Source of the DNA: Anthoceros angustus
Lineage: Eukaryota > Plantae > Anthocerotophyta
Direction of reading: 5' to 3'
NCBI GenBank assembly: GCA_010909165.1
Contig: MU008176.1
Location: forward strand, 922,856 to 986,855
Length of the DNA stretch: 64,000 nucleotides
A program made the position numbers and the translations under genes. How positions within the stretch are numbered: the stretch's first letter is position 1; every line of letters starts with the position of its first letter. The notes under the pieces were generated by a model. That model did not search any database. It was given only the letters and a program-made list of their open reading frames with translations, and was not told the DNA's origin. This document shows positions 2,243 to 63,210 of this stretch, piece by piece.

Positions 2243-2334
2243 TATGAAACTGAAACTTTTGCCGCAACTATATATGCCGGTGACATGATACACTAATTCC
2301 AATAAAAAAAAGCGTGGAAAGAAGTGTTGATGCC

Positions 2335-2906
2335 ATGGGCGTGGAGCATCAATAACTCGACATCGGGGGCGTCTAAAGGGGTCTAAAACAAGAAGACACT
2401 TGCCGCGGAAGGCATTGCGATGTGACCCAAAATGACAAATCACAAGGAATATTTGAGTCGGGATCCGTGGACAATATGCCATGGACGCGGGCTCGAGCAA
2501 AGAAGGCAAGGAGCAAGTCCGCAAGTCCAAGTCCAGCTAATTCAAGTGATGAAGAAGGTCATACAACAAACCCCAAAAGTGAGGAAAGAAGTGCCACAAG
2601 CCCCGGTGATTGATGGGAGGAAATGCCACAACAAGCCCTCGTAATTGATGGTGACGAAAAGCCACAAGAACCCTTAGTGATCGACAATGACAAGCTGATA
2701 AGTTGGAAGAAATGACAAGATTGATCCATACCGACCTTTGTCCTCCTCCAAATCCCCAATGGTTGACGGTGGTGACGACTACGACAAATTAGAAGAAATG
2801 ACGAGATGGATCGATATTGACCTTTGTCCTCCTCATGACTATTTTTTTGGGCAATGACTATGCAATCTTTGAGTCGAGGATGGAGAAAGACCAAGAGGAG
2901 AAATAG
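2335..2906 (+). pseudogene. Frameshifted homologue of the 468-aa AT-hook protein at 41657-43063 (array copy 1)
   Basis: Frame-corrected consensus translation ...RHRGRLKGSK(N)KKTLAE...QNDKSQG...TRAR...QVMKKVIQQTPKVRKEVPQ...EEMTRWIDIDLCPPHDYFxGNDYAIFESRMEKDQEEK* is colinear with RGRPKGSKNKKKIAE...QSNKLQG...TRAR...EVMNKVVQNSSEVRKNMSQ...EEMTKWIDTDLCPPHDYYLGSNDYEIFESWIDKELKEK. The frameshifts may be sequencing errors; the true 5' end is unknown. Confidence 0.8.
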
Positions 2907-5420
2907 GTATAGAAGTAGGAAAGTAAAATTGAGACGGTCTCAATTATGTGTATTGAGATATTACAAAATGTACTAAGAGTTTATTGTAAATAGTAAAATA
3001 CAAACATAGTAGAAGGTTGGAAGGAATCCGAATGAGGCAATAAAAGAACAATAAACTCCGCCCCAAGGCGCCATCACTCATAAGGACTTAAATTCCAGCC
3101 AGCTTCCCCAACCTACAGCGCATAAATGCGAGATATAGTGCACGTTGGCGTTGGCGTAGAAACACCCTCGCTCTACCCTCATGCAATGTGACCTCACGTA
3201 ATCGCGGGGTGAAAGGTGGAACGGGCCACGCGAGGCCCATGTTCTTTTGTAGTGCTGCCAGGCGCGCTAGCATCGACGATTGTAACCCCATAGATTGGGC
3301 GCCTTTAGGTCATATTTCTCTCTCTTTACATGATTTATTGGATATATCATGGTGAAACAATTTCTTGCCCAAGTCGGGCTGCTCGACCCGGCCCTAATTG
3401 TAACCCTAAAACCTGTTGTGGTGCTCGCCATTTTTGCTGCCCGCTCCGCCGCGGTGCGGAGCTCGAATCTACCGTACCCGCCATGCCGCTCCACGGCGTG
3501 AGGGGATGGCAGCCATGGTCTCACCCTTGCGCTGCTGTCACGACCATCTGTAGTCCGACTACATAGCTTGTGTGCAATACTCGGCTGAAGTATTTAGTGA
3601 TTGCCTTGAATGGCCGGAGGAATGGAGTGTAGAATAATGTGCTCCGCTTTCGCTAGGGTGCTGGAATGTCTAGGATTTTGTTGCGGTTGGGCATAGGAAA
3701 TGTGTGCGATGGTAGTGCAATGAGAAAGGAGATACCATTTGTGGGATTTGTCACGGTATGGTTGTGCTTAAACCGTCTTCTCAATGTGATTGCGTGCTTG
3801 ATCGATTCTCACGGACTCCTTGCAATGGTAGCCCTATAGAAAGCGGTTACACGCTCTTCCCGACCTCTTTATGATTTTGGACGACCTTCCAATTGAGCTC
3901 GTTGATGGCTCCCCTCTCATGTTCTTTGCCGCATTGTCATTCGTCTTTGGCGGAGATGATCAAGAGGAGGGTTCTTTGCTATTTAACTTACGTGGCAATT
4001 TATTGTGTGAGGAGCGGGAGTGAGGCAGCACCGGTGCCCATCAGTTGGATTTGTACACATAAACTAGGAGACAAAGTGATACAACAAGATGACTGAAAGA
4101 ACTAGGGTGTTGTCCCCTTTGTAATCTTGGACAGGTTAAGACAGTTAGCTAGCACAAGTTCAATAATGGACCATGTGCTGGCTAACTATCTCTAAGACAG
4201 GTTGAGAAGGACTTATCAGTATTCCTAGACCGTAGAGGGATATTGTTCAGTATCCCTCTACTCTATAGCACCGTGTTTACGATTCATGTGCAATGAAAGA
4301 TGCCAAGCGGTTCCATGGTCTAACTTAATAGCACCAAAAGGGTATGGAGGTGAAGGATTTATCAAACGCTAGAAGCGACGTACTATTAGAATCTTCTACG
4401 AACCCATAGATTGCATACTATCGGGGCGATCGCCTGTCGATTCTACTCGAAAATGTCTACCTCGTGGAACCAGGTACAAAGCAGTGTTAATGGACAGCCA
4501 AAATGAGCTTAGATTTCGAGGAAGAAGAAGAATTCTACAACTTTGGGCACACTTTGCCTACAAGGTGGCAACCCAATCGGGACACCACCCCATCGCCCCT
4601 GCAAGGTGAGGTGGCTAGAAGCTCTATGTGTGTGGTACACACCGGGACCGTCTGCCACCCCATGGTGCCCTCATATAGGGCAAGCACACAACCTAGGGCC
4701 TTAGGATAATGCCACTTACGGTCACATGCGACGTGATAGCTGAGTTTTCAAATCAACATTGCCTACATATCTTTGTATATAGATAAAGTTAAATTTGGTT
4801 CTATAATACCTACCTAGAATCTTTAAAATAGAATCGAAATACCTCTAGATATCCAATGGGGCTTAGTTGGGGAGTATGACATAAGATATGGATACGCATG
4901 TCACATGATAGATCGAATTTCTATATCTAGAAATTTATTCATCGGGATAAATATATCAATAATATCGTATAGGCAGTATGATAGGGCATTTTGAACCAGT
5001 ACATATAGAATGTTTCTAGCTAACTTCTTGGTCACCAATGAAGAGGGACGTTCTAGACTCTCTCTCGGGTATTCTTCTACGACGAACGCCTTGGTGTTAG
5101 TTCTTCAAGCACGACCATCTAATATCATAATTGTAAAGCCCAAGGAATGACAGTGTAGCCAACCAAGCTAGTATAGGAAATGAGGTCGTGGTATCCAAGA
5201 AATTAAGGATCCATCCTCGGATCATGGTATTTCCATCATGGTTTAATTGTATAATGATGTATTTGTTGGTATGATGTATGCCACCACCCCATGGCTCGAA
5301 AATGAAGGATATCTATCCTTGGATCATGATCTTTCTATCAAGGATTAATTGTATTAGCGATTTGTCATGTCCCATACCTTAAGAAAGGGCCATCCTTGGC
5401 CTTGAACTATCTTCCTTATG

Positions 5421-5760: not shown

Positions 5761-5847
5761 TGAAACCGAAACTTTTGCCGCAACTATATATGCGGTGACA
5801 TGATACACTAATTCCAATAAAAAAAAGTGGAAAGAAGTGTTGATGCC

Positions 5848-6402
5848 ATGGAACGTGGAGCATCAATAACTCGACATCGGGGCGTCTAAAGGGGTCTAAA
5901 ACAAGAAGACACTTGCGGAAGCTGCGGTAACCCAAAATGACAAATCACAAGGAATATTTGAGTCGATCCGTGGACAATATGCCATGGACGGGCTCGAGCA
6001 AAGAAGGCAAGGAGCAAGTCCGCAAGTCCAGCTAATTCAAGTGATGAAGAAGGTCATACAACAAACCCCAAAAGTGAGGAAAGAAGTGCCACAACAAGCC
6101 CCGGTGATTGATGGGAGGAAATGCCACAACAAGCCCTCGTAATTGATGGTGACGAAAAGCCACAAGAACCCTTAGTGATCGACAATGACAAGCTGTGATA
6201 AGTTGGAAGAAATGACAAGATTGATCCATACCGACCTTTGTCCTCCTCCAAATCCCCCAATGGTTGGTGGTGGCGACTCGACAAATTAGAAGAAATGACG
6301 AGATGGATCGATATTGACCTTTGTCCTCCTCATGACTATTTTTTGGGCAATGACTATGCAATCTTTGAGTCGAGGATGGAGAAAGACCAAGAGGAGAAAT
6401 AG
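5848..6402 (+). pseudogene. AT-hook-family homologue (array copy 2)
   Basis: Same segment as copy 1. Confidence 0.8.
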
Positions 6403-8888
6403 GTATAGAAGTAGGAAAGTAAAATTGAGACGGTCTCAATTATGTGTATTGAGATATTACAAAATGTACTAAGAGTTTATTGTAAATAGTAAAATACAAA
6501 CATAGTAGAAGGTTGGAAGGAATCAATGAGGCAATAAAAGAACAATAAACTCCGCCCCAAGGCGCCATCACTTCATAAGGACTTAAATTCCAGCCAGCTT
6601 CCCCAACCTACAGCATAAATGCGAGATATAGTGCACGTTGGCGTTGACGTAGAAACACCCTCGCCTACCCTCATGCAATGTGACCTCACGTGTCGCGGGG
6701 TGAAGGTGGAACGGGCCACGCGAGGCCCATGTTGTGTAGCCGTGAGGCGTGCTAGCATCGACGATTGTAACCCATAGATTGGGCGCCTTTAGGTCATATT
6801 CTCTCTCTTTACATGATTTATTGGATATATCATGGTGAAACAATTTCTTGCCCAAGTCGGGCTGCTCGACCCGGCCCTAATTGTAACCCTAAAACCCTGT
6901 TGTGGTGCTACGCCATTTTTGCTGCCCGCTCCCGCCTTGCGGTGCGGAGCTCGAATCTACGTGCCATGCCGCTCCACGAGCGTGAGGGGATGGCAGCCAT
7001 GGTCTCACCCTTGCGGCTGCAGTCACACGACCATCGTAGTCCGACTACATAGCTTGTGTGCAATACTCGGCTGAAGTATTTAGTGATTGCCTTGAATGGC
7101 CAGAGGAATGGAGTGTAGAATAATGTGCTCCCGCTTTCGTTAGGGGTGCTAGAATGTCTAGGATTTTGTTGCGGTTGGGCATAGGAAATGTGTGCAGTGG
7201 TAGTGCAATGAGAAAGGAGATACCATTTGTGGGATTTGTCACGGTATGGTTGTGCTTAAACCGCCTTCTCAATGTGATTGCGTGCTTGATCGATTCTCAC
7301 GGACTCCTTGCAATGGTAGCCCTATAGAAACGGTTACCGCTCTTCCCGACCTCTTTATGATTTTGGACGACCTTCCAATTGAGCTCAGTTGTTGGCTCCC
7401 CCTCTCATGTTGCTGCCGCATTGTCATTCGTCTTTGAGCAGGACAGTCGCAAAGAGGAGGGTTCTTTGCTATTTAACTTACGTGGCAATTTATTGTGTGA
7501 GGAGCGGGAGTGAGGCAGCACCGGTGCCCATCAGTTGGATTTGTACACATAAACTAGGAGACAAAGTGATACAACAAGATGACTGAAAGAACTAGGGTGT
7601 TGTCCCTTTGTAATCTTGGAGTTAAGATTAGCTAGCACAAGTTCAATAATGGACCATGTGGCTAACTATCTTTAAGACAAAGTTGAGAAGGACTTATCAA
7701 GATTCTAGACCGTAGAGGATATTGTTCAAGATCCTCTACTCTATAGCACCGTGTTTACGATTCATGTGCAATGAAAGATGCCAAGGTTCCATGGTCTAAC
7801 TTAATAGCACCAAAAGGGTATGGAGGTGAAGGATTTATCAAACGCTAGAAGCATTTACTATTAGAATCTTCTACGAACCCATAGATTGCATACTATCGAG
7901 CGGATCGCTGTCGATTCTACTCGAAAATGTCTACCACGTGGAACCAGCGGTACAAAGCAGTGTTAATGGACAGCCAAAATGACAGTTAGATTTCGAGGGA
8001 AGAAGAAGAATTCTACAACTTTGGGCACACTTTGCCTACAAGGTGGCAACCCAATCGGGACCTGCCACCCCATCTCGCCATAGGTGAGGTGGCTAGAAGC
8101 TCTATGTGTGGTACACACCGGGACCGTGCCGCCACCCCATGGTGCCTCATATAGGCAAGCACACAACCTAGGGCCTTCCGGATAATGCCACTTTACGGTC
8201 ACATGCGACGTTATAGCTGAGTTTTCAAATCAACATTGCCTACATATCTTTGTATATAGATAAAGTTAAATTTGGTTCTATAATACCTACCTAGAATCTT
8301 TAAAATAGAATCAGAAATACCTCTAGATATCCAATGGGGCTTAGTTGGGGAGTATGACATAAGATATGGATACGCATGTCACATGATAGATCAATTTCTA
8401 TATCTAGAAATTTATTCATCGTGATAAATATATCAATAATATCGTATAGGCGATGATAGGGCATTTTGAACCAAGACATATAGAATGTTTCTAGCTAACT
8501 TCTTGGTCACCAATGAAGAGGGACGTTCTAGACTCTCTCTCGGTATTCTTCTCTGACGCCTTGGTGTTAGTTCTTCAAGCACGACCATCTAATATCATAA
8601 TTGTAAAGCCCAAGGAATGACAAATAGCCAACCAAGCTAGTATAGGAAATGAGGTCGTGGTATCCAAGAAATTAAGGATCCATCCTCGGATCATGGTATT
8701 TCCATCATGGTTTAATTGTATAATGATGTATTTGTTGGTATGATGTATGCCACCACCCCATGGCACGAAATGAAGGATATCTATCCTTGGATCATGATCT
8801 TTCTATCAAGGATTAATTGTATTAGCGATTTGTCATGTCCCATACCTTAAGAAAGGGCCATCCTTGGCCTTGAACTATCTTCCTTATG

Positions 8889-9230: not shown

Positions 9231-9314
9231 ATGAAACTGAAACTTTTGCCGCAACTATATATGCGGTGACATGATACACTAATTCCAATAAAAAGTGGAA
9301 GAAGTGTTGATGCC

Positions 9315-9877
9315 ATGGAACGTGGAGCATCAATAACTCGACATCGGGGCGTCTAAAGGGGTCTAAAACAAGAAGACACTTGCGGAAGGCATTGCGGTAG
9401 CAACCCAAAATGACAAATCACAAGGAATATTTGAGTCGGGATCCGTGGACAATATGCCATGGACGGGCTCGAGCAAAGAAGGCAAGGAGCAAGTCCGCAA
9501 GTCCAGCTAATTCAAGTGATGAAGAAGGTCATACAACAAACCCAAAAGTGAGGAAAGAAGTGCCACAACAAGCCCGGTGATTGATGGGAGGAAATGCCAC
9601 AACAAGCCCTCGTAATTGATGGTGACGAAAGCCACAAGAACCCTTAGTGATCGACAATGACAATCGTGATAAGTTGGAAGAAATGACAAGATTGATCCAT
9701 ACCGACCTTTGTCCTCCTCCAAATCCCCAATGGTTGACGGTGGTGGCGACTACGACAAATTAGAAGAAATGACGAGATGGATCGATATTGACCTTTGTCC
9801 TCCTCATGACTATTTTTTTGGGCAATGACTATGCAATCTTTGAGTCGAGGATGGAGAAAGACCAAGAGGAGAAATAG
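9315..9877 (+). pseudogene. AT-hook-family homologue (array copy 3)
   Basis: Same segment as copy 1. Confidence 0.8.
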
Positions 9878-12364
9878 GTATAGAAGTAGGAAAGTAAAAT
9901 TGAGACGGTCTCAATTATGTGTATTGAGATATTACAAAATGTACTAAGAGTTTATTGTAAATAGTAAAATACAAACATAGTAGAAGGTTGGAAGGAATCC
10001 GAATGAGGCAATAAAAGAACAATAAACTCCGCCCCAAGGCGCCATCACCGAAGGACTTAAATTCCAGCCAGCTTCCCCAACCTACAGCATAAATGCGAGA
10101 TATAGTGCACGTTGACGTTGGCGTAGAAACACCCTCGCTCTACCCTCATGCAATGTGACCTCACGAATCGCGGGGTGAAAGGTGGAACGGGCCACGAGGC
10201 CCATGTTCTTGGTCTTCAAATTTCTTCGGCCCAAGTCGGGCTGCTCGACCCGGCCCTAATTGTAACCCCATAGATTGGGCGCCTTTAGGTCATATTTCTC
10301 TCTCTTTACATGATTTATTGGATATATCATGGTGAAACAATTTCTTGCCCAAGTCGGGCTGCTCGACCCGGCCCTAATTGTAACCCTAAAACCTGTTGTG
10401 GTGCTCGCCATTTTTGCTGCCGCTCCGCCCGCGTGCGGAGCTCGAATCTACCGTACCCGCCATGCCGCGCTCCACGGCGTGAGGGGATGGCAGCCATGGT
10501 CTCACCCTTAGCACACAGTACCATCTCGTAGTCCGACTACATAGCTTGTGTGCAATACTCGGCTGAAGTATTTAGTGATTGCCTTGAATGGCCGGAGGAA
10601 TGGAGTGTAGAATAATGTGCTCCCGCTTTCGCTAGGGGTCTTTGGAATGTCTAGGATTTTGTTGCGGTTGGGCATAGGAAATGTGTGCGATGGTAGTGCA
10701 ATGAGAAAGGAGATACCATTTGTGGGATTTGTCACGGTATGGTTGTGCTTAAACCGTCTTCTCAATGTGATTGCGTGCTTGATCGATTCTCACGGACTCC
10801 TTGCAATGGTAGCCCTATAGAAACGGTTACCGCTCTTCCCGACCTCTTTATGATTTTGGACGACCTTCCAATTGAGCTCGGGTTGATGGCTCCCCTCTCA
10901 TGTTCTTTGCCGCATTGTCATTCGTCTTTGAGCGGATGCAAAGAGGAGGGTTCTTTGCTATTTAACTTACGTGGCAATTTATTGTGTGAGGAGGCGGGAG
11001 TGAAATTGCCTATCGGTTGGATTTTGTACACATAAACTAGGAGAAAAGTGATACAACAAGATGGTGAAAGAACTAGGGTGTTGTCCCTTTGTAATCTTGA
11101 GTTAAGACAGTTAGCTAGCACAAGTTCAATAATGGACCATGTCGCTAACTATCTTTAAAACAGTTGAGAAGGACTTATCAAGATTCTAGACCGAGGGATA
11201 TTGTTCAAGATCCTCTACTCTATAGCACCGTGTTACGATTCATGTGCAATGAAAGATGCCAAGCGCCCATGGTCTAACTTAATAGCACCAAAAGGGTATG
11301 GAGGTCAAGGATTTATCAAACGCTAGAAGCGGGCGTACTATTAGAATCTTCTACGAACCCATAGATTGCATACTATCGAGCGGATCGCTGTCGATTCTAC
11401 TCGAAAATGTCTACCTCGTGGAACCAGGTACAAAGCAGTGTTAATGGACAGCCAAAATGATGCTTAGATTTCGAGGGAAGAAGAAGAATTCTACAACTTT
11501 GGGCACACTTTGCCTACAAGGTGGCAACCCAATCAGACCGCCACCCATCTCGCCCCGCAAGGTGAGGTGGCTAGAAGCTCTATGTGTGTGGTACACGGGA
11601 CCGTGCCGCCACCCATGGTGCCCTCATATAGGGCAAGCACACAACCTAGGGCCTTCCGGATAATGCCACTTTACGGTCACATGCGTGATAGCTGAGTTTT
11701 CAAATCAACATTGCCTACATATCTTTGTATATAGATAAAGTTAAATTTGGTTCTATAATACCTACCTAGAATCTTTAAAATAGAATCGAAATACCTCTAG
11801 ATATCCAATGGGGCTTAGTTGGGAGTATGACATAAGATATGGATACGCATGTCACATGATAGATCGAATTTCTATATCTAGAAATTTATTCATCGTGATA
11901 AATATATCAATAATATCGTATAGGCGTTATGATAGGCATTTTGAACCGATTACATATAGAATGTTTCTAGCTAACTTCTTGGTCACCAATGAAGAGGGAC
12001 GTTCTAGACTCTCTCTCGGTATTCTTCTGACAGGCGCCTTGGTGTTAGTTCTTCAAGCACGACCATCTAATATCATAATTGTAAAGCCCAAGGAATGACA
12101 GTAGCCAACCAAGCTAGTATAGGAAATGAGGTCGTGGTATCCAAGAAATTAAGGATCCATCCTCGGATCATGGTATTTCCATCATGGTTTAATTGTATAA
12201 TGATGTATTTGTTGGTATGATGTATGCCACCACCCATGGCACGAAATGAAGGATATCTATCCTTGGATCATGATCTTTCTATCAAGGATTAATTGTATTA
12301 GCGATTTGTCATGTCCCATACCTTAAGAAAGGGCCATCCTTGGCCTTGAACTATCTTCCTTATG

Positions 12365-12705: not shown

Positions 12706-12791
12706 TGAAACTGAAACTTTTGCCGCAACTATATATGCCGGTGACATGATACACTAATTCCAATAAAAAAGCGTGGAAAAGTGTTGATGCC

Positions 12792-13357
12792 ATGGAACGT
12801 GGAGCATCAATAACTCGACATCGGGGCGTCTAAAGGGGTCTAAAACAAGAAGACACTTGCGGAAGGCATTGCGGTAGCAACCCAAAATGACAAATCACAA
12901 GGAATATTTGAGTCGGGATCCGTGGACAATATGCCATGGACGGGCTCGAGCAAAGAAGGCAAGGAGCAAGTCCGCAAGTCCAGCTAATTCAAGTGATGAA
13001 GAAGGTCATACAACAAACCCCAAAAGTGAGGAAAGAAGTGCCACAACAAGCCCTGATTGATGGGGAGGAAATGCCACAACAAGCCCTCGTAATTGATGGT
13101 GACGAAAAGCCACAAGAACCCTTAGTGATCGACAATGACAAGCTGTGATAAGTTGGAAGAAATGACAAGATTGATCCATACCGACCTTTGTCCTCCTCCA
13201 AATCCCCAATGGTTGACGGTGGTGACGACTCGACAAATTAGAAGAAATGACGAGATGGATCGATATTGACCTTTGTCCTCCTCATGACTATTTTTTTTTG
13301 GGCAATGACTATGCAATCTTTGAGTCGAGGATGGAGAAAGACCAAGAGGAGAAATAG
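12792..13357 (+). pseudogene. AT-hook-family homologue (array copy 4)
   Basis: Same segment; ORF 12936..13148 shows QVMKKVIQQTPKVRKEV plus three 12-aa PQQ/ExLVIDG/N repeats. Confidence 0.8.
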
Positions 13358-13687
13358 GTATAGAAGTAGGAAAGTAAAATTGAGACGGTCTCAATCATGT
13401 GTATTGAGAAATACTGTGGCTCGCTTTTCTACTTTTGAAAAAAAGCCGAGTTCGGCCCCAGATTGTGCAGCCTTCCTACCACAGGTTCCGTTCAGTATCA
13501 TCCCATAGACTAGTTAGAGGGAGGTATATTCGTACAGTGTTTGCAGTTTGTTTTTTGCTTCACACATTTTTTCCACGGTGTATGGGAGTGCTCTTGGATT
13601 GTTTGTTGGAGGAAGAGGTAAGCGGCCAATGCATCCTCAGGCATGTCTTCCCGCGACACCTCGTTTCAGGCTTGCTTTATTCTCAGG

Positions 13688-31500: not shown

Positions 31501-32655
31501 CCCAAATGGCAACAAACGACTGGAGGTGGCATATCAGGATGCTCAGACAAGGTTCAGTGGACACTCTGAGAGCAGCTGTCCTATCTTCTTGTTCTTCTCG
31601 GTAATCTGTTTCGGTTTTGTTACTTCTGCCCATCGCCTGAAGTTTTGAAGCTTGTTGAATCTGCTGTTGGTGAATAGTTGCGTGTGAACGTCTCTCACCT
31701 CTTACTGGCATGGACAGGTAAATGCAAGCGGACAATTCTGTGGTGTAGCAGAAATGGCTGGATCAGTGGATTTCAACAAAAGTGTAGACTATTGGCAGCA
31801 GGACAAGTGGAATGGCCGCTTCAGTGTGAAGTGGCACATCATCAAAGATATCGCGAACTGTTATTTTCGTCACATTATTCTGGAAAACAATGACAACAAA
31901 CCCGTGACAAACAGTAGAGACACTCAGGAGGTAATTGACAAAGGAAACATGGCAAAGCGGGCCGTTTTTTGGTGGAATACACAGGAATATCCAGTTCTCG
32001 GGGTTGGAATGATCTGACTCTGCTCTACGTGGAATTTTGTTGAGCAGGTCAAATTTGAACAGGGACTGGAGATGCTCACTATCTTCAAGAATTTTGAGTT
32101 TAAGACTTCAATTCTGGATGATTTCCAGTTTTATGAGAACAGACAGAGAGCAATGCAAGAGAAAAAAGCTCGCCAACACGTTCAGCAACAACGGGAGCAC
32201 CGTCAGCAGGTGCACCCTTGTGACTTAAGCATTCATCTAAGGAGTCCTGTAATATGGTGGTTGAGTTCTTTTGCAATTAACGGGCTTAAAACGTTTTTTT
32301 ATTGTGGAAACAGGGAGAAGTGCACCTGGCTGGTAACCACGATAAAGTATGCTTTGATGATGCTTCTGCCAAGGTGAAGGTGGCGGCGAAGGCCACGGAA
32401 GTTGCAAGTGAGAATGGTCACAGTACAACAAACCCACGCATACTGTGCCCGGCTGAGGTGAACTCCAGATATGCTGTTAATCAGAGTGACATCTGTGAGT
32501 TGACGTCCCAGAGATTAGGGCAGTTAAGCTTGACGAATGAGAGGGAGAACTCCTCAGCTTCTTCTACAGACCCGGCCCCAGGTGAGGAGGGAACTGTTTT
32601 GACATCCGACTCATTGTCTGCTGACGAAAATGGGTTGGTGAAGCAGGAAAACTAG
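28568..32655 (+). CDS. ECT: YTH-domain m6A reader, YTHDF/ECT family (ECT2-like)
   Basis: Exons 28568-28595, 29505-29569, 29733-29901, 30075-30142, 30226-30765, 30911(or 30914)-31600, 31718-31930, 32048-32209, 32314-32655, all GT-AG. N-terminus [19 protein letters not shown] resembles plant ECT2 N-termini, followed by a Y/P/Q/G-rich disordered region. YTH domain [28 protein letters not shown]...[13 protein letters not shown]...[10 protein letters not shown]...[12 protein letters not shown] has all three aromatic-cage Trp. Confidence 0.95.
28596..29504 (+). other. Putative U12-type (minor spliceosome) GT-AG intron 1 of the YTH gene
   Basis: 5' splice site |GTATCCTG. Branch site TTCCCTTGAC at 29483-29492 with the branch A 13 nt before CAG|, and no polypyrimidine tract. 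Splicing gives an in-frame, ECT-like PVDQASDL. Confidence 0.8.
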
Positions 32656-38900: not shown

Positions 38901-39528
38901 CGACAGTTTCACTCATTAGGAGCAGGTGTGATTGAAGATGTCCGGGTGCAGAGAGACAAGGGGTTTGGTTTTGTTAGGTATCGCTCTCATGAAGAAGCTG
39001 CATTTGCGATTCAAATAGCAAATGGCAGGGTCATCTGTGGGAAGTCTGTCAAGGTAATTGTGAGGGAGCTTAAATGTTTGGCCTAGATTTGCTTTTTTTC
39101 TTCTCTGTACATTTGTGGCCATAGTGTATGTAGTCTTCATTTGCAGCTTTGTGGTGTTCCCAGTTCCACAGCCATTGATGACATCTCTTGTCTACTGGCA
39201 GTGTTCCTGGGGCAGCAAGCCTACTCCTCCGGGGACGACATCTACCCCTTTGCCACCCCCTCCTCCAAATCATTTTCAAGGAGTTATCCCAGCAGGTCTG
39301 AACCAAGCTTTTAATGGAGCAGCTGAGCTTCTAGGTTACGGAAGAGTGAACCTGGGTCAACCTGGAGCTGGACGTGCGCTTTTGCCACTACCACACCAGC
39401 AAGGGTTAGGAATTGGACTTGGGCAAGCTCCTCTGGGTGCTGGAGGCAACCGCACGCTTTACGAGGGCTTTCAACCAGGTGGAGGGCTTCCAACTGGTGG
39501 TCTAGGCCAGCAGCGACTTTATTACTGA
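35961..39528 (+). CDS. UBP1: Oligouridylate-binding protein 1 (UBP1/TIA-1-like, three RRMs)
   Basis: Exons 35961-36122, 36708-36769, 37210-37312, 37599-37675, 37822-37883, 37979-38066, 38159-38234, 38330-38360, 38461-38613, 38698-38804, 38880-39053, 39202-39528. PolyQ N-terminus, [85 protein letters not shown]. The start could instead be the ATG at 35970. Confidence 0.95.
36207..36297. repeat. Compound pentanucleotide microsatellite (GTCAG/GTCGG/GTCGA)n in UBP1 intron 1
   Basis: gtcgagtcaggtcaggtcaggtcagttcaggtcgggtcgggtcggg...gtcgagtcgagtcggg. Confidence 0.95.
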
Positions 39529-41236
39529 TGGATGAGGCAACCGGTGTAGAGATCTGACCTGTCCAAGACATTTGACGGGGGCCCTGTCCGACAGACTCCA
39601 GATTTTTTCTCACAGTGATCCTTCGAGGGGACGCTTCCTTGTTTGCCTTCTTCCTCTGATCCTGTGGGTCCTGACAAACTGTGGCCAGTGAGGATATAAC
39701 ATAGACCTGGCTTTGTAAATGGGCCTAGGTAGGTAGGTGGTTCACATCATCTCCGGACTCGTGGAAAACTGCTGAGTTAGTTTCCTGCTGGATCGCCCAA
39801 TTGTACAGTATGAGTTTACACATCGTGCAAGGCAACTTGTCCAGCTCTTGAGTTCGAGGTACCTTGTAAATCTCACCCCTGGACCACTTATTAGGTCTCT
39901 GTCTCATGGTCGATGGCAGAATGCAACAGTTTCTTGTATGTGTATGTACATTTTCTGGCCATTTCCAGGCCAATTTAGTATGTTTTTACCAGATATCCTG
40001 TGTGTCTGCGGGACACCAAGCCTACTCCTGCAGGATGACCCCTTGCCGGGCTCCGCCTCCGATAGGTTGCTTTCAAGCTGTCCATCAGATATTTTTGTGG
40101 GCTAGGCCTGGTGTGAACGGGGGAACCCAGCCTGAAGGGTTGGTTATCTTTCGTCCTTTCGCCAATGCCACACTGGACATTGTAGAATTAATCCTAAACG
40201 ACCGGCCCCTCTGGACATTTTCTGAAGGAAAATAATGAGAAATTAATTGTTGTCTTTCTTAAGTAAAATATTTAATTTTAAATTTAAAAAATATATGTTT
40301 CACAATTTTACAAAGAAGCGCTTTCCAACGAGGTATGTCTTAGCCCATTTCATGAACCAATGTAATCTTGGCCCATTTCATGAATAAATGTAATTACGTT
40401 GAAGTGAGGAACGGCCCTATCGATTCTCGGGAGAGCACCTCTCTCTATGGTTTGTGCAAATGATATAGCGAAACACGCTGCATGCAAGATCACTAGAAGG
40501 GTGGCATGAATGCAAGTGTTCCATGCGAAAATCACAAACAGCAAAGCTCAAAACAATGGATTCCAAGTGTTCGAACGCAAAAGTCTTTCACAAACTGAAT
40601 AAAACTTCACAGACTTATGTGCGGCAACAAAATAGGACACGTCCAAGAAAGCCCCCAGACATGAGCACCACCCGCTTACCGTGATCGAAGTCCTCTACCA
40701 CATACTCTAGCCTTATTGGTTGGCTTGCCCTAACACTAGTACCTTCATTGGGAACCAGAGTGTTTGACATAGAGTCGCTGACACCGCACAATGCAGCCGA
40801 GAGTCATTACAGTCCGTAGAGAAGGCGAGACAAAACGCATAAAAACCAAAGGTCAATGAGAGAAGCAGATATGGCGATTCTTATACAATCTCACATTAGT
40901 TCTTTGGCTGAATCCTAATCCATTTTTTGTGTTCTTGACTTGGGAAGAGAGCGCTTTCAGCGGCAAACACACCATGATCTTTTCCAAAAGTTTTCATATC
41001 ACAATTGCACGCAATCCCATACAAAATAGGCGAAAGGCCTAGTTTGGGATTTTAGGTCGATTAGGGTGAAGTATCTATATATCTCTAGTGTTTTATATTT
41101 AAAATGGCTCCCTAGCAAGGCCTCTTTAGTAAGGGGTGTTACTCTTCCCTCCATTTAGTATCTGTCTCTAAGTTTTTGTTTCCAATATACATACCAAATA
41201 CAGTAGTATCACTTTAATAATATAGTATTAAATTAA

Positions 41237-41632
41237 GTTGAAGACGTTACTTAGTACTTGCTATATATGGGGGATCCATGGCCATAAAAGGGCTAGCTTA
41301 TAAAGCTCACTTCCTCCACACCGCTCTTGAGAAGGACATAGAAGCTTTAAGCTTAAGTAACTGCTACAAAAAGACCAGCTCATAGAGGTTACTTCCTCTA
41401 CACCCCTATAGAGAAGATCAGAGGAGCTTTAAGCTTAAGTAACAGCTACATGTGGGGGATCGATGGCCATATAAAAAGGCTAGCTCGTATACCTTTAAAA
41501 TCACTTCCTCCACTCTTGAAAAGGTCATAGGAGCTTTCAAATTACGCTAGGACCTTAGCGGAATTGTTGTGGAAGCGTATATTGTGAAGTTGGAAGGGAG
41601 CTTTGAACTGAACATTGGGAGAAGAGAACTAA
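41237..41632 (+). promoter_or_regulatory. Upstream module shared by AT-hook-family loci (homologous to 61910-62177), internally triplicated
   Basis: gttgaagacg(g)ttacttag...ggatccatg(g/a)ccata...aaagggctag...cacttcctccacacc...gaagg and gtgaagttggaagggagctttga occur at both loci. The cacttcctc...gaag...agcttt block appears three times in 41266-41540. A regulatory role is inferred from position only. Confidence 0.6.
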
Positions 41633-41656: not shown

Positions 41657-43063
41657 ATGAAAAGAACACGTGATCATTCTGGAGTTACATTAAAACGTTG
41701 CCTCAAACAAAGGAAGACAAATCAAATACCTAATAATGTAATATTCAAAATAGAGGGAACAACTCTACCTTTATCGAAGATGGAAGACACGAAAAAAGAT
41801 GACGAGAGTAATAATTTAACAGAGGATCCTATTTTTATAGATGAGGACGATGATTCAAGCGACGAGGACCATTATTCAAACTATGAGAACCCTGATTTAA
41901 GTGATGAGGAGCATGATTTAAGTGATGAGGAGCATGATTTAAGTGATGAGGAGCATGGTTCAAGCGATGAGGAATACAGACCTATGCCTCGACGCCGAGG
42001 ATGTCAAAATATACGGTCCAAAAATAAGAAAACCGTTACAACAAAAGCTACTAGACATAGATTTCAAAGACTCAAAACGTCTGGTAAAAATGAAAGGGAA
42101 GAGAAAGATACAAAAAACAATGAGAAAGAGAGACCAATGCCTCGACCTCGGGGACGTCCAAAGGGGTCAAAAAATAAGAAGAATCTTGCTAAGGAAGTTT
42201 TTAAACATAGATTTCAAGGACTCAAAACATCCGACAACATTGACATTGATGAAGAAATTCAAAAGAATAGTATTTACCACAATAGTAATGTGTGCTTGGT
42301 GCAAAAACAAGACTCGGAGATTGAGTCCGATAGAAAAGAAGTGAAAATAAATCTTGCTGCCGATCTAATAATGCAACTTGGAGAATCAAAACCTCCACGC
42401 CGAGGACGGGGACGTCCAAAAGGGTCCAAAAATAAGAAGAAAATTGCTGAAATAATAGGAGCCCAAAGTAACAAATTACAAGGATTTGAGACATTCAATA
42501 ATATGGAACTTGAAGGAATTCCAAAGAAGGGCTTTCACTATATTCAAATCGATATACCAACAAAAGTTTATCGAACAAGGGCTCGTTGTTTATTAGAAGC
42601 ACAGAACGATATGGCACAATCATCCCCTGAAGTGATGAACAAGGTCGTACAAAATTCTTCAGAAGTGAGGAAAAATATGTCGCAACAATCCCAGGTGAAT
42701 AATGCTGACGATTACAACATGGAAGCGAAGAACGCTTTTTCTGACCAATGGAGTTCGTTGGACAATTTGAATATTCTTTCAGATCGAAACTATTCACTAG
42801 AAGAAATGAATATTTTTTCAGACCAATGGAGTTCATTGGACAAATTCGATCTGCTTTCAGATCAATACAAGTCAATGGAAGAAATAAATCCTCTTTCATA
42901 TCAGGAAAATTCACTAGAAGAAATGACCAAATGGATCGATACTGACCTTTGCCCTCCACATGATTATTATCTTGGCAGTAATGACTATGAGATCTTTGAG
43001 TCATGGATAGACAAAGAGTTGAAAGAGAAACAGGGGTCCTCTTCGGGCTTTATGGAGTTTTAA
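41657..43063 (+). CDS. Uncharacterised 468-aa intronless protein: acidic tract, three AT-hook-like modules, 13-aa repeats and a conserved WIDTDLCPPHDY C-terminus
   Basis: Intact 1.4-kb ORF in AT-rich DNA. (DLSDEEH)x3; PRPRGRPKGSKNKK and RRGRGRPKGSKNKK (AT-hook core RGRP) plus one degenerate module; five SDQWSSLDxxxxL-like repeats. Homologues lie elsewhere in the window. Confidence 0.8.
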   Translation: MKRTRDHSGVTLKRCLKQRKTNQIPNNVIFKIEGTTLPLSKMEDTKKDDESNNLTEDPIFIDEDDDSSDEDHYSNYENPDLSDEEHDLSDEEHDLSDEEHGSSDEEYRPMPRRRGCQNIRSKNKKTVTTKATRHRFQRLKTSGKNEREEKDTKNNEKERPMPRPRGRPKGSKNKKNLAKEVFKHRFQGLKTSDNIDIDEEIQKNSIYHNSNVCLVQKQDSEIESDRKEVKINLAADLIMQLGESKPPRRGRGRPKGSKNKKKIAEIIGAQSNKLQGFETFNNMELEGIPKKGFHYIQIDIPTKVYRTRARCLLEAQNDMAQSSPEVMNKVVQNSSEVRKNMSQQSQVNNADDYNMEAKNAFSDQWSSLDNLNILSDRNYSLEEMNIFSDQWSSLDKFDLLSDQYKSMEEINPLSYQENSLEEMTKWIDTDLCPPHDYYLGSNDYEIFESWIDKELKEKQGSSSGFMEF

Positions 43064-45929
43064 AGTGAATTTATGCAATCACAATAGCGTAGCTGTTTGT
43101 ATTTAGGATGCTAACAGATTCGTGATTAGTGTCTAGTTCATGTAGTTCATGAACAAAGCAATTCGGCAACATTCGCAATATAAATTTTGTGAGTTCACGA
43201 ACCAGTTGGATCCTCCTAACAAGAATATGCAATATAAAGTGGTATGGACTCAAGGCTGAAACTAACAAATAATCATAAATTCAAAATTATATGTTCATAA
43301 TCTTAAAATTAAATTGAACAATAATAATAAATTTAATTATCCACCAATAATTCAAAATTATCCATTGATTATCTAGTAAACTTGTAAACCCTTTTTTTTT
43401 CTTGTCATTTAATAAAATGACTAAATTTTATGAAAATAATGTCGGGATCCTTGCCGAGAAGGCTTCCCAATGACATAATGCCTCCATCGAGCAAGCGTGT
43501 TGCAATCAGATTCCATGTCTATCAAAAACTCATGTTCCCACCGGTGTAGGTAGATGTGCTGTGCGCACATATCTCAAGAATCTGAACACACTTCTCCTCC
43601 ACCATTGACTTCAAAATTGCACAAGAAAGTTGCCAAAAATTGGCTTGAACATAAAAGAACGCAGTCCAAGCTCTACCTCATCTCCACTAAAAGAAACCCC
43701 ACTAAGTACAATCCAATCGCCTTTTCCTGATGCGATAATACGATGTGTAACATAGGGGAATCAGAACCCTTGTTGAAGATTTCTCCTCCGGGTTTGTTTT
43801 GATTTAGTTTAAAACTAATAAATTTTAAAAAAACTACAATCCAACCTCCCACGCTCCTTGCCATTGATATACAAAGATGTGTGTACGCACTCTACTAAGT
43901 CATTTGCCTCGCCATTGGATTAATGATCCACCACCGGTTAAGGTGCTGCTCTATGCACTGTCAGGGCACACTACAAAATAGATGAAGTGCGAAATGTGAC
44001 TTTTGGCCAGGACTGTTTTCTGTTTTGGAGACTTCCTGAGCAGAAAACAACTGGGTGTGAAGTCCTGGTACATCTTTGAAAAATGCCTTGCGTCCCTTGG
44101 GCAACGGTGGAAGACCACATGTACACTAACCCCCTAGATTGGTTTGAATGTTTTTTTGTTTTCTTATGTTTTGTATGATGGAGTGCTTAGGAAATGTCCG
44201 AGGCAAGGCCTCTTATACTAAAAGGGTCCTTGGCCCATGACAATATTACTTTTTAGTCCTTGGACCTCGAACTGTGAATGTCAAAGGTGCTAGAAGGTCC
44301 TTGGACCTTGGGATTTTAGGAATAAAATTGTCTACATAAGGTGGGGATCCTTCATTCGATTGATGCGGAAGTGGGAGGTGGCTAGTTCCACAACGGTGGC
44401 GAATATGGAGCGTCTGAGATCTTGGCGGGAGATAACAACCCTAGTTGCGGAGCCGGGGTTGACAGTGAGCTGAGCACTAGCAGAGTTGGAGCGCAATTGG
44501 AAGAAGACCGCATCTTGGTACTGTGATTCTGCGAGATTTCAAGGCCAAAGGCTAAGTTCGCAACCGGGTGGGACTGCAGTGAAGTTAAGTGAAGGAGGCG
44601 CATGCGACGAATGAGGAGCTCCAGAATGAAATTTCACGAGCCCAGGAACAAGTGGAGACGCAGGCACCTCTAGAGAAGTTCAAGAAGCTAGTGAAGAGGT
44701 ATAAGCGGAAGAGAGATGAGCTAGAGCATGGATGGAGGAACGCACTGTTTGGCTGTCCAATGATGAGGAGCGAGGAAACATGCGCAGGGGCAGTAGACGG
44801 ACGGCGCATCCTAGGAGGAGTGAAGAGACCTCGGATAGCGGGAGTGAGGTGGAGATATTAAGGGAGGATCTTGGGATCGGGCGTGGTAGGAGGCGGGGAA
44901 CACCCATGGGCCGCAGGCTAGGCGGCCACAGGAGGCGGGCGCGCTGATTTTAGAGGGGAGTGGCATCATAGGTCAGGGCTTTCACTTGGATTAGAGGATA
45001 AGGTGCTAGGAAGCCTGTGAACCTGTAGATACCCGAATTGGTAGGCGCGCTAGTGGTAGGATAGCCATCTTTAGATACTGGAGGTAGGTTAGCCATCTTT
45101 AGACACTGGAAAAGTGAGTTCTGGCGCTCCGCGGCCGGATGTACAAGAGACCCCTTCGCGTCTCCCTCGTTAGACAATTTCAGGTGTGAGCTCTCGTGTG
45201 TCGAATCTGCGCGCGTGGTTGGTTGGAGACGACCGATCGATGACGGACTGATTCGGTGTGCTGTCCTCTCGTCACAAGAGGGCCGGGGAGATCCTTGGAT
45301 GGTCGAGAGCTGAGTGACCAAGATCCGCGTCTGGGGTGACTAGTGGTGAAGGGTGCTCGATGCATGCCAGGAGAGGGAAATTCCCGCAGGGGACCGGGGT
45401 GAGATCGCGGGTGTGCGAATCGCCTGTGGAGCCGACAAGCTGTTTTTTTTCCTTTCCCAACCCGCTGTCTAACCAGATTGTGTCTAATCCCAAGGAAGGG
45501 TCTGTGTGGCCCAAGGAGGGTGCAGCCCAAGAGAGGTCATGTGGCAGAGAGAGGAGGATCTGTCAGAACATCTTGTGCGCGGTGGTGTATGAGGTCCTGG
45601 AAGAAGGGGTGAGTGAGTCATTGTGTGAAGGGAGTCTAGGTGGTGAGCGCGAGGTGGAAACGCGGAGCGGGGAAGGTTGGGAATAAATTGTGGGGTCGGA
45701 GGAAATCGGCGGTGAGGTGCAGCGGCGTGCGTGGCCATGGTGTGCATCCACCGGTGAGCTGGGTGTGAATCCACATGAGTGTGACTTGGTGTACATGTGA
45801 ACCTGTGTGCATAGGACCATAGCCCTTAACGAGCGTAGCAGGGGAACCGGGCGCCAAATAGTCGATCGCGATGCACTCGCGCGCCGGTCGGGTGGGTCCC
45901 ACCACAGTGGCTGAATCAGCCACCGCGGA

Positions 45930-45980: not shown

Positions 45981-46254
45981 TGATGAAATATGACCTATTT
46001 AGGGCACTCTTCACTAGGGCACCTAAGGCTATTAATTAATTTAGTTCTTAGGGCTTTAGGTAGTTTAATGAGTAGTTAGTTGTTACAACCACTTAGAGGT
46101 TAGAACTACTTATGGTTACAACCACCTTATGGTTATAACCACCTAGCCTATATAAAGGCTTTGTACTTTCTATTATAATCAATGCATACAACTTTTGTGC
46201 AAAGCTTTCTACTATCGCTATGTTTTGCTACCTAGAGCACTATGATTCTCATCA
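45981..46254 (+). repeat. 5' LTR (274 bp)
   Basis: tgatgaaatatgacc...tatgattctcatca; contains TATATAAA. Confidence 0.95.
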
Positions 46255-46265
46255 TGGTATCGAGC
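46255..46265 (+). other. Primer-binding site for tRNA-iMet (one base missing)
   Basis: TGGTATCGAGC versus canonical TGGTATCAGAGC, directly after the 5' LTR. Confidence 0.9.
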
Positions 46266-47045
46266 ATTGCTGCTCTCTATTTGCATTGGACAACTTGACA
46301 TGCTGATCTACTCTTCTTCTTCATCTTCTTCTTCATTTCTTTTTAGAAGATGCATAGATTCTTTAGATTGCATGTCATAGATTGTCATGTTTTGCCTTCC
46401 TTAATCTTCAATAATGCACACAGTGCATCCAATCCTTGCTTCAATGCGATGGACCTTCAATCCTCAAGCAAGGCTATTGGAAGAAGATTAAGGCTGCAAG
46501 ACAAGAGATAGAATATAGGAATGCAAAGATTAGAATTGCTAGGAAGTCTAGTAAGATAGTAGGAGATTCCATACTTATTGCTAACTTCATTGGCTCTATT
46601 CTAATCAAAGTAGAAGATCAAGGGAGGCGGATAGAATTGCTAGAAGAAACTTGCTTACTATCTTTAGTTTAAGTCAAGTGAAAGCAATTGAACTCGCTCT
46701 TGATCATATCCCAAATCTACAAGCGGTCCTCTTCCTCCTCTCCAATGCGGGTTTACAACAACACAAGCAAGAAACTTCCGATTCGATAAAGACTCTCGCC
46801 AGAGAACCACGTCAACACACCCTACGAACAAGCATAGAGGAGTTAGCAAGAGAAGTGCGTGATCTCAATAAGCGCCTCCTTGAGCATCTTGATCCAAACA
46901 TCAATCTTCATCACAAACTTTCCCTTCTGCTCGTCATCCCGACAAACACGCCAAGACAGAAAAGGTTTCTTCTTGTTTTGCTCCTTGCGATTTCTGCATG
47001 ATGATGAGGAAATGCGCGCGCTCTCTAAGCAATAGTGACCACACA

Positions 47046-60330: not shown

Positions 60331-60375
60331 TGTAAGTAATGCTTTATCACATACATACATAAAAGCTCATTATAT

Positions 60376-61662: not shown

Positions 61663-62270
61663 TACACTCTCTGCAATGTAGGCCCTCTATACATAATAAG
61701 ATGCTTTGTGATTTGAATCATGCGGTGATAACCTACCTTACATGGGTTGTCCCTAGAAACCGAACCACACACGCAATCAAGGTAGTGAGCTAAGAATAGG
61801 TTAAGGTGGCGCTTGACAGCGTGTGAAACATGCCAAAGATGGCAACTAGCAGCTAATTGGTTTAGGTTTACTATATAGGTTCACATTTAAAAAACAAGTA
61901 AAGAGTTATGTTGAAGACGGTTACTTAGCAACTACTATATGTGAAGGATCCATGACCATATAAAAGGGCTAGGTCTTAGAGCTTTAAGATCACTTCCTCC
62001 ACACCCTTGTGAAGAAGGTCACTGGATCTAGCTTAAAGCTGTTTGAGTATATGGAAACCTGTCTTTTCGCACTAGGGACCCTTAGAAAATTGAGTATTAA
62101 CGAGATTGATTTTTGAGGAATCCTAGAGTGTGAAGTTGGAAGGGAGCTTTGAGGTGAGATTGAGAGAGGAGGACTAATTGTCGGAACCAAAGTGTGTAGA
62201 TGACTAGCACTCTCTAATCTCTCTATTGCTTAGTCCAGAGTAAACGACAAGAGACGATTAGGCTACAGAA

Positions 62271-63210
62271 GATGAGAATGAAAAGGACGAGGGCGATGAT
62301 TCAAGCGGCGAGGAAAAAAGATTTATGCCTCAACATCGGGGACGTCCAACAAGTTCCAAAAACTAAGAAGACCCATGATACAAAAGCTGATAAACATAGA
62401 TTCCAAGGACTAAAAACATCCGGCAATGAGAATAAAGGAATTCAACAGATGAGTATTGACCACAAGGATACCTCGATGGAGGATGATGAAATTGAACACA
62501 AGCTAAGTAACGAGAAGCTTGCTCGTGGAAATATATCGAGCACCAACTTGAGCTCAGATTGGAAACGTGATGATCATGTTACTAAAGATGAGAATGAAAA
62601 GGAAGAGGACGATGATTCAAGCAACGAGGAAGAAAGACCAAAGCCTCGACGTCGTGGACGTCCGAAGGGGTCAAAAAATAAGAAAACTTTTGGTGCAAAA
62701 GTTGCTGGACGTAAATATCAAGAACTCAAATTAACATTCGGCAATATGGATAAAGGAGTTCGAAAGAGGAGTGTTGACCACAAGGACACCTCCTTGGCGG
62801 ATGGGCAAGATGATGAAAATGAAAACGAGCTTGGTATTGAGAAGTTTGTTTGTGGTAATAGATCGAGCTTCAATTGGAGCAATTGGAGCTCATGCTGGAA
62901 TCTTGAGCAGTCTAATGGAAGCAATATTCATTTTTTTGCCCAACCGCAAGATATGCCTCATTATGTAAATCTCTTCTGGTCTACCTATAATAATTTATTC
63001 CCAAAATAAGAACAAGTCTCAAAAATGAAGTGTGAAAAAAAAAGTAGTGAAAAGAAGTACCACTATTGCGCTCCCATAAGCGAACTTGGAGAATAATAAC
63101 CCTGACATCAAGGAGACCCGATGGATTCTTTCGGACCTTTGTCTTGTAATGACTATTTGTTTTTGGTAATTATTATGACATTTTTAATCGTGGATTCACA
63201 AGGATTCAAA
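62271..63210 (+). pseudogene. Third, decayed AT-hook-family locus with a duplicated ~315-bp module
   Basis: DDDSSNEEERPKPRRRGRPKGSKNKK and KHRFQGLKTSG match the 468-aa ORF. 62271-62553 resembles 62587-62880. 63118-63205 reads RWILSDLC/NDY../GNYYDIF/SWIHKD across frameshifts, matching KWIDTDLCPPHDYYLGSNDYEIFESWIDKE. Confidence 0.8.

What the first reader, a model, noticed from the sequence alone, without database searches (positions are those of the whole stretch)
41657..43063. Candidate undescribed system: amplifying family of AT-hook proteins with a conserved WIDxDLCPPHDY...IFESW C-terminal motif
Seen: one intact 468-aa intronless ORF here, four copies inside the 3.5-kb array and a decayed copy at 62.3-63.2 kb, all on the plus strand. 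Shared design: (RGRPKGSKNKK...FQG-like) modules in variable number (3 here, 2 at 62 kb, 1 in the array, where GRP has become GRL) and a conserved ~30-aa terminal motif EEMT[K/R]WID[T/I]DLCPPHDY.LG.NDY.IFES, partly duplicated in the array copies. Acidic tracts precede the modules here and at 62 kb, and short repeats are locus-specific (13-aa here, 12-aa in the array). There is no PPC/DUF296, histone H1 or HMG domain, so it is not a standard AHL or HMGA protein. Inference: a lineage-specific chromatin-binding protein that spreads with its own upstream module in repeat-rich DNA. It could be a transposon accessory or anti-silencing factor (conceptually like VANC proteins), or a satellite-binding selfish gene whose acidic-aromatic tail is an interaction or activation motif.
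Basis: partly seen in the sequence, partly recalled or inferred. Interest (0 to 1): 0.82.

Follow-up and report, generated by a model that had tools for sequence, protein, structure and literature searches.

The report
Orphan AT-hook gene with dead paralogues
This is most likely a real but lineage-restricted plant gene for a disordered DNA-binding protein, carrying HMGA-type AT-hooks and a short conserved tail found nowhere else, while its supposed amplified copies nearby are all broken relics, so it is a modest curiosity and not a new selfish system.

Summary
The 468-codon ORF at 41657-43063 (+) is real and far longer than chance allows: 476 stop-free codons against a maximum of 230 in simulations. 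It has a basic N-terminus and an acidic SDEE-repeat tract. It has one degenerate and two canonical AT-hooks; hook 2 matches human HMGA1 DNA-binding domain 2 at 12 of 12 residues. In-frame 13/26-aa repeats follow, then a roughly 40-aa terminal motif.

That motif recurs in each unit of the 3.49-kb macrosatellite. Comparison with the array copy shows purifying selection in the ORF's frame only (pN/pS 0.23, P = 4e-4).

All four array copies are 3'-half fragments broken by shared stops and frameshifts. The 62-kb copy is frameshifted and has no terminal motif in the window. The upstream module is shared only between the 41-kb and 62-kb loci.

I found no LTRs or terminal inverted repeats around the ORF and no sign of high copy number. 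No relative of the tail turned up in Pfam, a word-index search, a 1.84-billion-protein HMMER scan, PDB, the ESM Atlas or JGI metagenomes. Expression could not be tested.

Verdict: an orphan AT-hook gene in a local birth-and-death cluster. The transposon or selfish-gene reading is not supported. An untested scan note reports a similar three-hook orphan ORF 73 kb upstream.

The parts
41204..41632 (+). Upstream module. It includes an 82-bp tandem duplication (41281-41444) with TATA-like boxes (CCATAAAAGG / CCATATAAAAAGG) about 185-370 nt before the ATG. Putative promoter.
   Evidence: Matches 61876-62177 at 73-81% identity. Repeat family D2. Sequence read directly. The promoter role is inferred.
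41657..43063 (+). Intact 468-aa ORF: an orphan AT-hook protein predicted to be disordered.
   Evidence: The stop-free run is 476 codons, against a maximum of 230 in 500 Markov simulations. AF2 mean pLDDT is 41.7.
41660..41716 (+). Basic N-terminal stretch (net +7 over the first 30 aa); possible nuclear localisation signal.
   Evidence: Charge profile, coordinates. The NLS role is inferred.
41840..41974 (+). Acidic Ser/Asp/Glu tract built from 21-bp (7-aa) in-frame repeats. Four SDEE sites fit the casein kinase 2 consensus S-x-x-E.
   Evidence: The CK2 fit is read from the sequence. Phosphorylation was not tested.
41990..42031 (+). Hook module 1, degenerate: the GRP core is replaced by GCQ, while the KNKK and RHRFQ parts are kept.
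42143..42181 (+). Canonical extended AT-hook 2.
   Evidence: 12 of 12 residues identical to HMGA1 DNA-binding domain 2 (PDB 2ezd), E 0.007. Regex scan.
42401..42442 (+). Canonical extended AT-hook 3.
   Evidence: 90% DNA identity to hook 2 over 42 nt (family D5)..
42737..42925 (+). In-frame 39/78-bp (13/26-aa) acidic-aromatic repeats.
   Evidence: families D1, D4. R1-R2 dN/dS is 0.55.
42911..43030 (+). Conserved terminal motif of about 40 aa, predicted as helix-loop-helix around a DLCPPHDY loop.
   Evidence: tblastn to the array. Alignment A1. pN/pS 0.23, P = 4e-4, seen in this frame only. AF2 helices with local pLDDT up to 83.
2298..2907 (+). Array unit 1: broken 3'-half paralogue (GRL hook, 12-aa repeats, duplicated terminal motif).
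5813..6403 (+). Array unit 2: broken 3'-half paralogue. The terminal motif is in one frame but stops lie upstream.
9287..9878 (+). Array unit 3: broken 3'-half paralogue.
12759..13358 (+). Array unit 4: broken 3'-half paralogue.
61876..63114 (+). Decayed 5'-half paralogue. It has the upstream module, an acidic tract and two hook modules, the first frameshifted at about 62359-62363. No terminal motif.

Best explanation
The ORF is a lineage-restricted, fast-evolving gene for an intrinsically disordered nuclear protein in a seed-free land plant. It is the one surviving member, within this window, of a small cluster made by local duplication and decay.

Proposed working, all inferred:
- The basic N-terminus takes the protein into the nucleus.
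- The two canonical hooks, and perhaps the degenerate one, bind the minor groove of AT-rich DNA as HMGA proteins do.
- The acidic SDEE tract, a likely casein kinase 2 substrate, tunes that binding, as the HMGA acidic tail is thought to.
- The acidic-aromatic repeats and the conserved terminal helix-loop-helix motif recruit a partner protein, in the manner of an activation or interaction motif.

The macrosatellite copies and the 62-kb copy are pseudogene fragments. The array amplified a dead 3' half as a passenger.

Shown: the intact ORF, the identity of the hooks, selection on the tail, the decay of the other copies, and the absence of relatives. Inferred: expression, nuclear location, DNA binding and the role of the tail.
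For: ORF length and repeat periods:
- The stop-free run is 476 codons, against a maximum of 230 in composition-matched simulations.
- The ORF would stay open with P = 0.02 after 5% neutral substitutions and P = 0.001 after 10%. Its segments differ from their paralogues by 20-30%.
- All tandem repeats inside the ORF have periods divisible by three (21, 39/78 and 153 bp). Repeats outside it (82, 28 and 50 bp) and in the dead array copies (34-36 bp) do not.

Selection on the tail:
- ORF against array unit 2 over 40 codons gives Sd 12 and Nd 14 on 20 synonymous and 100 non-synonymous sites, pN/pS 0.23, binomial P = 4e-4.
- Of the six frames, only the ORF's frame shows this. The antisense ORF frame gives a ratio above 1.

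Domains and fold:
- Hook 2 is identical to HMGA1 DNA-binding domain 2 over 12 residues.
- No globular domain is found.

Local cluster:
- All three loci lie on the + strand within 64 kb.
- The upstream module plus 5' half is duplicated at 62 kb.
- Ordinary genes lie nearby: an RRM gene at 38.8-39.1 kb, plus YTH and PPR genes.

HMGA hooks, the acidic tail and CK2 are described in PMC11291832.
Against: - There is no expression evidence. The only run guessed to be RNA, from the same sample, has nothing on the ORF, but it is tiny at 30 Mb.
- GC3 of the ORF (0.33) resembles its AT-rich flanks (0.40), not the neighbouring PPR gene (0.51).
- The hook modules give dN/dS of 0.2-1.07, which is weak or no constraint. 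One partner in most of those comparisons is a pseudogene.
- The selection test was run on the segment chosen because its protein is conserved, so it is biased upward.
- No orthologue from another species could be examined.
- The closest named relatives of the neighbouring PPR gene are only 44-47% identical (Diphasiastrum complanatum). Public protein sets may therefore hold no close relative of this plant, which weakens 'no homologues' as a claim of novelty.
Confidence: 0.55

Rival explanations
1. The ORF no longer works or never did. It could be a recently dead paralogue that has not yet picked up a stop, or a young ORF built by in-frame repeat expansion in AT-rich intergenic DNA. The selection signal on the tail would then date from an ancestral functional gene.
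For: - There is no RNA evidence.
- GC3 is like the flanks.
- Every other copy in the window is dead.
- There are no homologues anywhere.
- Hook 1 is already degenerate.
- dN/dS of the hook modules reaches 0.8-1.07.
Against: - 468 open codons survive only 2% of the time after 5% neutral substitutions, before counting indels.
- All internal repeat expansions kept the frame.
- Two perfect HMGA-type hooks are kept.
Confidence: 0.25
2. The ORF is carried by a mobile or selfish element: a transposon accessory or anti-silencing factor, or a satellite-binding gene that spreads with its promoter module.
For: - Copies occur in repeat-rich DNA and one paralogue sits inside a macrosatellite.
- An upstream module travels with the 5' half to 62 kb.
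- Unchecked scan notes report AT-hook ORFs inside Copia elements of this genome and a similar three-hook orphan ORF in an amplified unit 73 kb upstream.
Against: - No LTR, terminal inverted repeat or other element end brackets the ORF.
- It lies 2.9 kb outside the only LTR pair in the window, 45981-54730, and that Copia carries no hook.
- The copies are clustered and co-oriented rather than dispersed.
- Contig depth over the ORF (9-15) equals that of its flanks, while a real repeat at 43642-43875 reaches about 370-470.
- All amplified copies are broken.
- The array does not carry the upstream module.
Confidence: 0.12

Closest known systems
HMGA (HMG-I/Y) architectural chromatin proteins of animals
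   Same: Disordered protein with three spaced AT-hooks and an acidic CK2-type tract. Hook 2 is identical to HMGA1 DNA-binding domain 2 over 12 residues. The expected mode of action is minor-groove binding to AT-rich DNA (PMC11291832).
   Different: - It is 468 aa, where HMGA is about 100 aa (my own knowledge).
- The acidic tract lies before the hooks, not at the C-terminus.
- There is no similarity outside the hooks.
- It has its own conserved C-terminal motif and 13-aa repeats.
- Shared hooks do not show common descent.
Plant AHL (AT-hook motif nuclear-localised) proteins
   Same: Plant nuclear AT-hook proteins. From memory, the hook followed by GSKNK resembles the AHL type-I hook.
   Different: The defining PPC/DUF296 domain is absent (Pfam scan). 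No AHL appears among the protein hits.
Plant HMGA (linker-histone globular domain plus AT-hooks)
   Same: Several AT-hooks in a plant protein.
   Different: No H1/H5 globular domain.
VANC anti-silencing proteins of VANDAL (Mutator-like) transposons
   Same: A conceptual likeness only: a fast-evolving, lineage-specific accessory ORF near repeats.
   Different: - No element ends around the ORF.
- No sequence relatives.
- Low copy number.
- No transposase nearby.
AHA-type acidic activation motifs of plant class A heat stress factors
   Same: The tail has aromatic and large hydrophobic residues (W, F, I, Y) set among D and E in short predicted helices. That is how AHA motifs are described (PMC4746267).
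   Different: This is a resemblance in composition only. There is no homology and no HSF domain, and activation was not tested.

Membership tests
AT-hook DNA-binding motif (Pfam PF02178 / SMART SM00384) | R-G-R-P core flanked by basic residues | tested here: met
   Hooks 2 and 3 have RGRPKGSKNKK. Hook 2 is 12/12 identical to the HMGA1 DBD2 chain 2ezd_A, E 0.007. Hook 1 (GCQ in place of GRP) does not meet it. The Pfam scan itself reported no AT-hook hit.
AHL (AT-hook motif nuclear-localised) | PPC/DUF296 domain (PF03479) after the hook | tested here: not met
   Pfam scan at E up to 1 returns only a sub-threshold SIN1 match.
Plant HMGA | N-terminal linker-histone H1/H5 globular domain | tested here: not met
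   No such hit in Pfam. The AF2 model has no folded domain.
Animal HMGA | Small protein with three hooks and a C-terminal acidic tail; homology across the protein | tested here: not met
   Only the 12-residue hook matches. The acidic tract is N-terminal to the hooks and the protein is 468 aa.
LTR-retrotransposon accessory ORF | ORF lies between the two LTRs of an element | tested here: not met
   The only LTR pair is 45981-46254 / 54452-54730. The ORF ends at 43063. No direct repeats bracket 39.6-46 kb.
DNA-transposon accessory gene (VANC-like) | Terminal inverted repeats and a transposase in the same element; dispersed copies | tested here: inconclusive
   The only inverted-repeat pair near the ORF is a 26-nt, 73%-complementary chance-level match. 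Depth suggests low copy number. The rest of the genome could not be searched.
AHA-type activation motif | [quoted passage not shown] | not testable with these tools
   The composition fits. Activity needs a reporter assay.

The most novel reading that the evidence does not exclude
The ORF may belong to a rapidly turning-over local cluster of AT-hook proteins that bind AT-rich satellite or macrosatellite DNA and co-evolve with it. Drosophila D1 and vertebrate HMGA1 do something similar with pericentromeric satellites (my own knowledge). In this reading the conserved tail is a new partner-recruiting motif. The paralogue embedded in the 3.5-kb array and the untested note of a similar three-hook orphan ORF in another amplified unit 73 kb upstream would be traces of that arms race.
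Probability: 0.1. Interest if true: 0.65.

Novelty: new variant of a known kind. Interest (0 to 1): 0.3.

Why it matters
If the gene is expressed, it adds a plant example of an HMGA-like multi-hook protein that lacks the domains defining the plant AT-hook families (PPC, H1 globular). It would also carry a short selected tail motif with no known relative, which is a tractable candidate for a new chromatin-partner interaction motif in an early-diverging land-plant lineage.

The locus also shows how a macrosatellite can carry a dead gene fragment. Arrays of gene-like copies should therefore not be read as gene amplification without checking the reading frames.

Tried and rejected
Searches that found nothing:
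- Pfam on the ORF, the 62-kb ORF and both antisense ORFs gave nothing above threshold.
- The word-index protein search on the full ORF gave 12 hits, and the two I aligned matched only through repeated RGRPKGSKNK hooks. On aa 300-468 it gave none.
- The exhaustive HMMER scan of aa 300-468 gave two hits. The one I aligned (P0013) is a very long protein with a periodic repeat that matches the ORF's 13-aa repeat region; the best stretches of both hits lie there and not on the terminal motif.
- The ESM Atlas gave no usable hit.
- PDB gave nothing for the tail.
- A JGI metagenome scan with the tail alignment gave nothing.
- Exact-sequence look-ups of the ORF and the PPR protein found neither on record.

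Structure: AF2 gave no fold (pLDDT 41.7 for the whole protein, 63 for the tail), so I did not run fold searches.

Reads:
- One DNA run holds 36% of the words. Its short contigs differ mostly by 1-nt gaps, many of them in homopolymers.
- Some substitutions come from cross-mapping of the internal repeats.
- I judged the run uninformative on whether the frame is intact in other individuals.

Antisense ORFs across the motif (42495-43004, 6032-6439) are rejected as genes. Their lengths are within chance (99th percentile 177-195 codons) and their frames show no synonymous excess.

The bacterial promoter/terminator scan is not relevant to a plant gene.

The broken array and 62-kb copies were read frame by frame only.

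Full report
**Observation**

The window holds an ATG-to-stop ORF of 468 aa at 41657-43063 on the + strand. Its stop-free run of 476 codons far exceeds the longest run in 500 second-order Markov simulations of 3 kb with the same composition: median 101-114, 99th percentile 177-195, maximum 230.

The protein is rich in K, E, S, D and N. Its parts, with coordinates, are:
- a basic N-terminus;
- an acidic tract made of 21-bp in-frame repeats with four SDEE sites;
- three hook modules;
- 13/26-aa acidic-aromatic repeats;
- a terminal motif.

Hooks 2 and 3 are canonical. Hook 2 is identical over 12 residues to the second DNA-binding domain of human HMGA1 (PDB 2ezd, E 0.007). Hook 1 has lost the GRP core.

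**The other copies**

tblastn of the ORF against the window finds the terminal motif once per unit of the 3.49-kb array, at about 2.8, 6.3, 9.8 and 13.2 kb (E 4e-13 to 4e-8), with a second partial copy in each unit. The array runs from position 1 to 13412 with about 95% identity between units.

Sensitive blastn shows that a unit is collinear with only the 3' 700 nt of the ORF: hook 3, a middle segment and the tail. Three-frame translation shows that every unit needs at least three frames and carries in-frame stops shared by the units. No + strand ORF of 90 aa or more exists there. These are pseudogene fragments.

The 62-kb locus shares the upstream module (61876-62177 against 41204-41632, 73-81% identity), an acidic tract and two hook modules. 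Its first hook is frameshifted, its 245-aa ORF starts in an alternative frame of that module, and no terminal motif occurs in 62-64 kb. The array does not carry the upstream module.

**Is the ORF coding?**

- For the terminal motif, ORF against array unit 2 over 40 codons gives 12 synonymous and 14 non-synonymous differences on 20 and 100 sites. That is pN/pS 0.23 with binomial P = 4e-4. The 28-codon core gives P = 0.002.
- Repeating the count in all six frames shows the synonymous excess only in the ORF's frame. The frame of the 169-aa antisense ORF (42495-43004) gives a ratio above 1, and that ORF's length is within chance.
- The segment was chosen because it is conserved, so the test is biased upward. 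The frame specificity is not affected by that choice.
- Hook modules give dN/dS of 0.2-1.07, mostly against pseudogene partners.
- All tandem repeats inside the ORF have periods divisible by three. Those outside it, and the repeats of about 35 bp in the dead array copies, do not.
- With substitutions alone, the ORF would stay open in 2% of trials after 5% divergence and in 0.1% after 10%. Paralogous segments differ by 20-30%.
- Against a working gene: GC3 is 0.33, like the flanks (0.40) and unlike the neighbouring PPR gene (0.51). There is also no expression evidence.

**Relatives**

- Pfam gives nothing above threshold.
- The word-index search of 5.8 billion proteins gave 12 hits, and the two I aligned matched through hooks only. 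It returned nothing for aa 300-468.
- An exhaustive HMMER scan of 1.84 billion representatives with aa 300-468 gave two hits. The one I aligned (P0013) is a very long protein with a periodic repeat; the best stretches of both hits lie on the ORF's 13-aa repeats and none on the terminal motif.
- PDB, the ESM Atlas and a JGI metagenome scan gave nothing.
- The protein itself is not on record.
- The neighbouring PPR protein's best named relatives are from the lycophyte Diphasiastrum complanatum, at 44-47% identity. Unnamed Logan contigs reach 56%. The source is therefore a seed-free land plant with no close annotated relative in these sets, which limits what 'no homologue' can mean.

**Structure**

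AF2 on the whole protein gives mean pLDDT 41.7 and no fold. On the tail alignment it predicts two helices around the DLCPPHDY loop, with mean pLDDT 63, a local peak of 83 and pTM 0.27. This is consistent with disorder and a short motif that folds on binding.

**Context**

- An RRM gene lies upstream at 38.8-39.1 kb.
- A decayed Copia lies downstream at 45981-54730, with 279-bp LTRs at 96.8% identity and a gag hit. It carries no hook.
- No direct repeat brackets the ORF, and the one weak inverted-repeat match does not bracket it.
- The single DNA run that holds the stretch gives contig depths of 9-15 over the ORF and its flanks, against about 370-470 for a repeat at 43642-43875. This hints at low copy number, with the tool's own caveat on reading depth.
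- That run's 1-nt gaps fall largely in homopolymers, and some substitutions are cross-mapping of internal repeats. It says nothing firm about other individuals.
- The run guessed to be RNA is too small to test expression.

**Interpretation**

The best reading (0.55) is an orphan, disordered AT-hook protein gene in a local birth-and-death cluster. One dead 3' half was swept into a macrosatellite.

The mechanism is inferred by analogy with HMGA proteins (PMC11291832). The hooks would bind the minor groove of AT-rich DNA, the acidic CK2-type tract would modulate that binding, and the tail would recruit a partner. The tail's composition recalls the AHA activation motifs of plant heat stress factors (PMC4746267), but that is a resemblance and not a membership.

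Two rivals remain:
- A dead or never-functional ORF (0.25).
- A transposon-borne or selfish gene (0.12), which the missing element ends, the clustering, the low depth and the broken amplified copies all argue against.

**Earlier notes of the scan**

These are unchecked leads:
- The array and the PPR cluster were noted separately on this window.
- Other windows of this genome are said to hold Copia elements with antisense AT-hook ORFs.
- A note places an orphan ORF with acidic repeats and three AT-hooks in an amplified unit 72.7 kb before this window. If that ORF is related, the cluster is larger than what is seen here. I could not read that DNA.

Reads were laid on 3,501 letters. 

Noticed in passing
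window 20835-21033 (-): A full-length U2 spliceosomal snRNA gene (Rfam RF00004, 163.7 bits, model positions 1-192) sits between two of the tandem PLS-type PPR paralogues.
   Followed up: no
window 13857-25442 (-): Three tandem intronless PLS-class PPR ORFs (842, 987 and 1128 aa) with 312-bp internal repeats in 2.7, 3.6 and 5.1 copies. An E motif is present. The best named relatives are from Diphasiastrum complanatum at 44-47% identity.
   Followed up: partly
window 45981-54730 (+): A decayed Copia element: 279-bp LTRs at 96.8% identity, a gag and DUF4219 hit at 46998-47465, and an internal tandem duplication of about 1.4 kb (48838-50277 / 50274-51675, 94.6%).
   Followed up: partly
window 43642-43875: A short, very high-copy repeat. 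Summed contig depth is about 370-470 in the DNA run, against about 10 for its surroundings. It is also the only part of the laid stretch present in the run guessed to be RNA.
   Followed up: no
window 42495-43004 (-) and 6032-6439 (-): Antisense ORFs of 169 and 135 aa stay open across the conserved tail motif, even in array units where the sense frame is broken. Their frames show no synonymous excess and their lengths are within chance, so they look like by-products of sense-strand codon composition.
   Followed up: yes
window 60371-60712: A (TATA)n microsatellite of about 86 units lies 1.2 kb upstream of the decayed 62-kb paralogue's upstream module.
   Followed up: no
window 30836-31648 (+) and 38778-39086 (+): Exon-like ORFs with a YTH domain (E 5.5e-14) and an RRM domain (E 4.2e-13). 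The AT-hook ORF therefore sits in a neighbourhood with ordinary genes.
   Followed up: partly
window 1904-2243, 5441-5759, 8889-9230, 12385-12704: Each array unit carries a 50-bp minisatellite (6.5-7 copies, about 90% matches) directly upstream of the broken AT-hook fragment, in the place where the intact gene has its 5' half.
   Followed up: no
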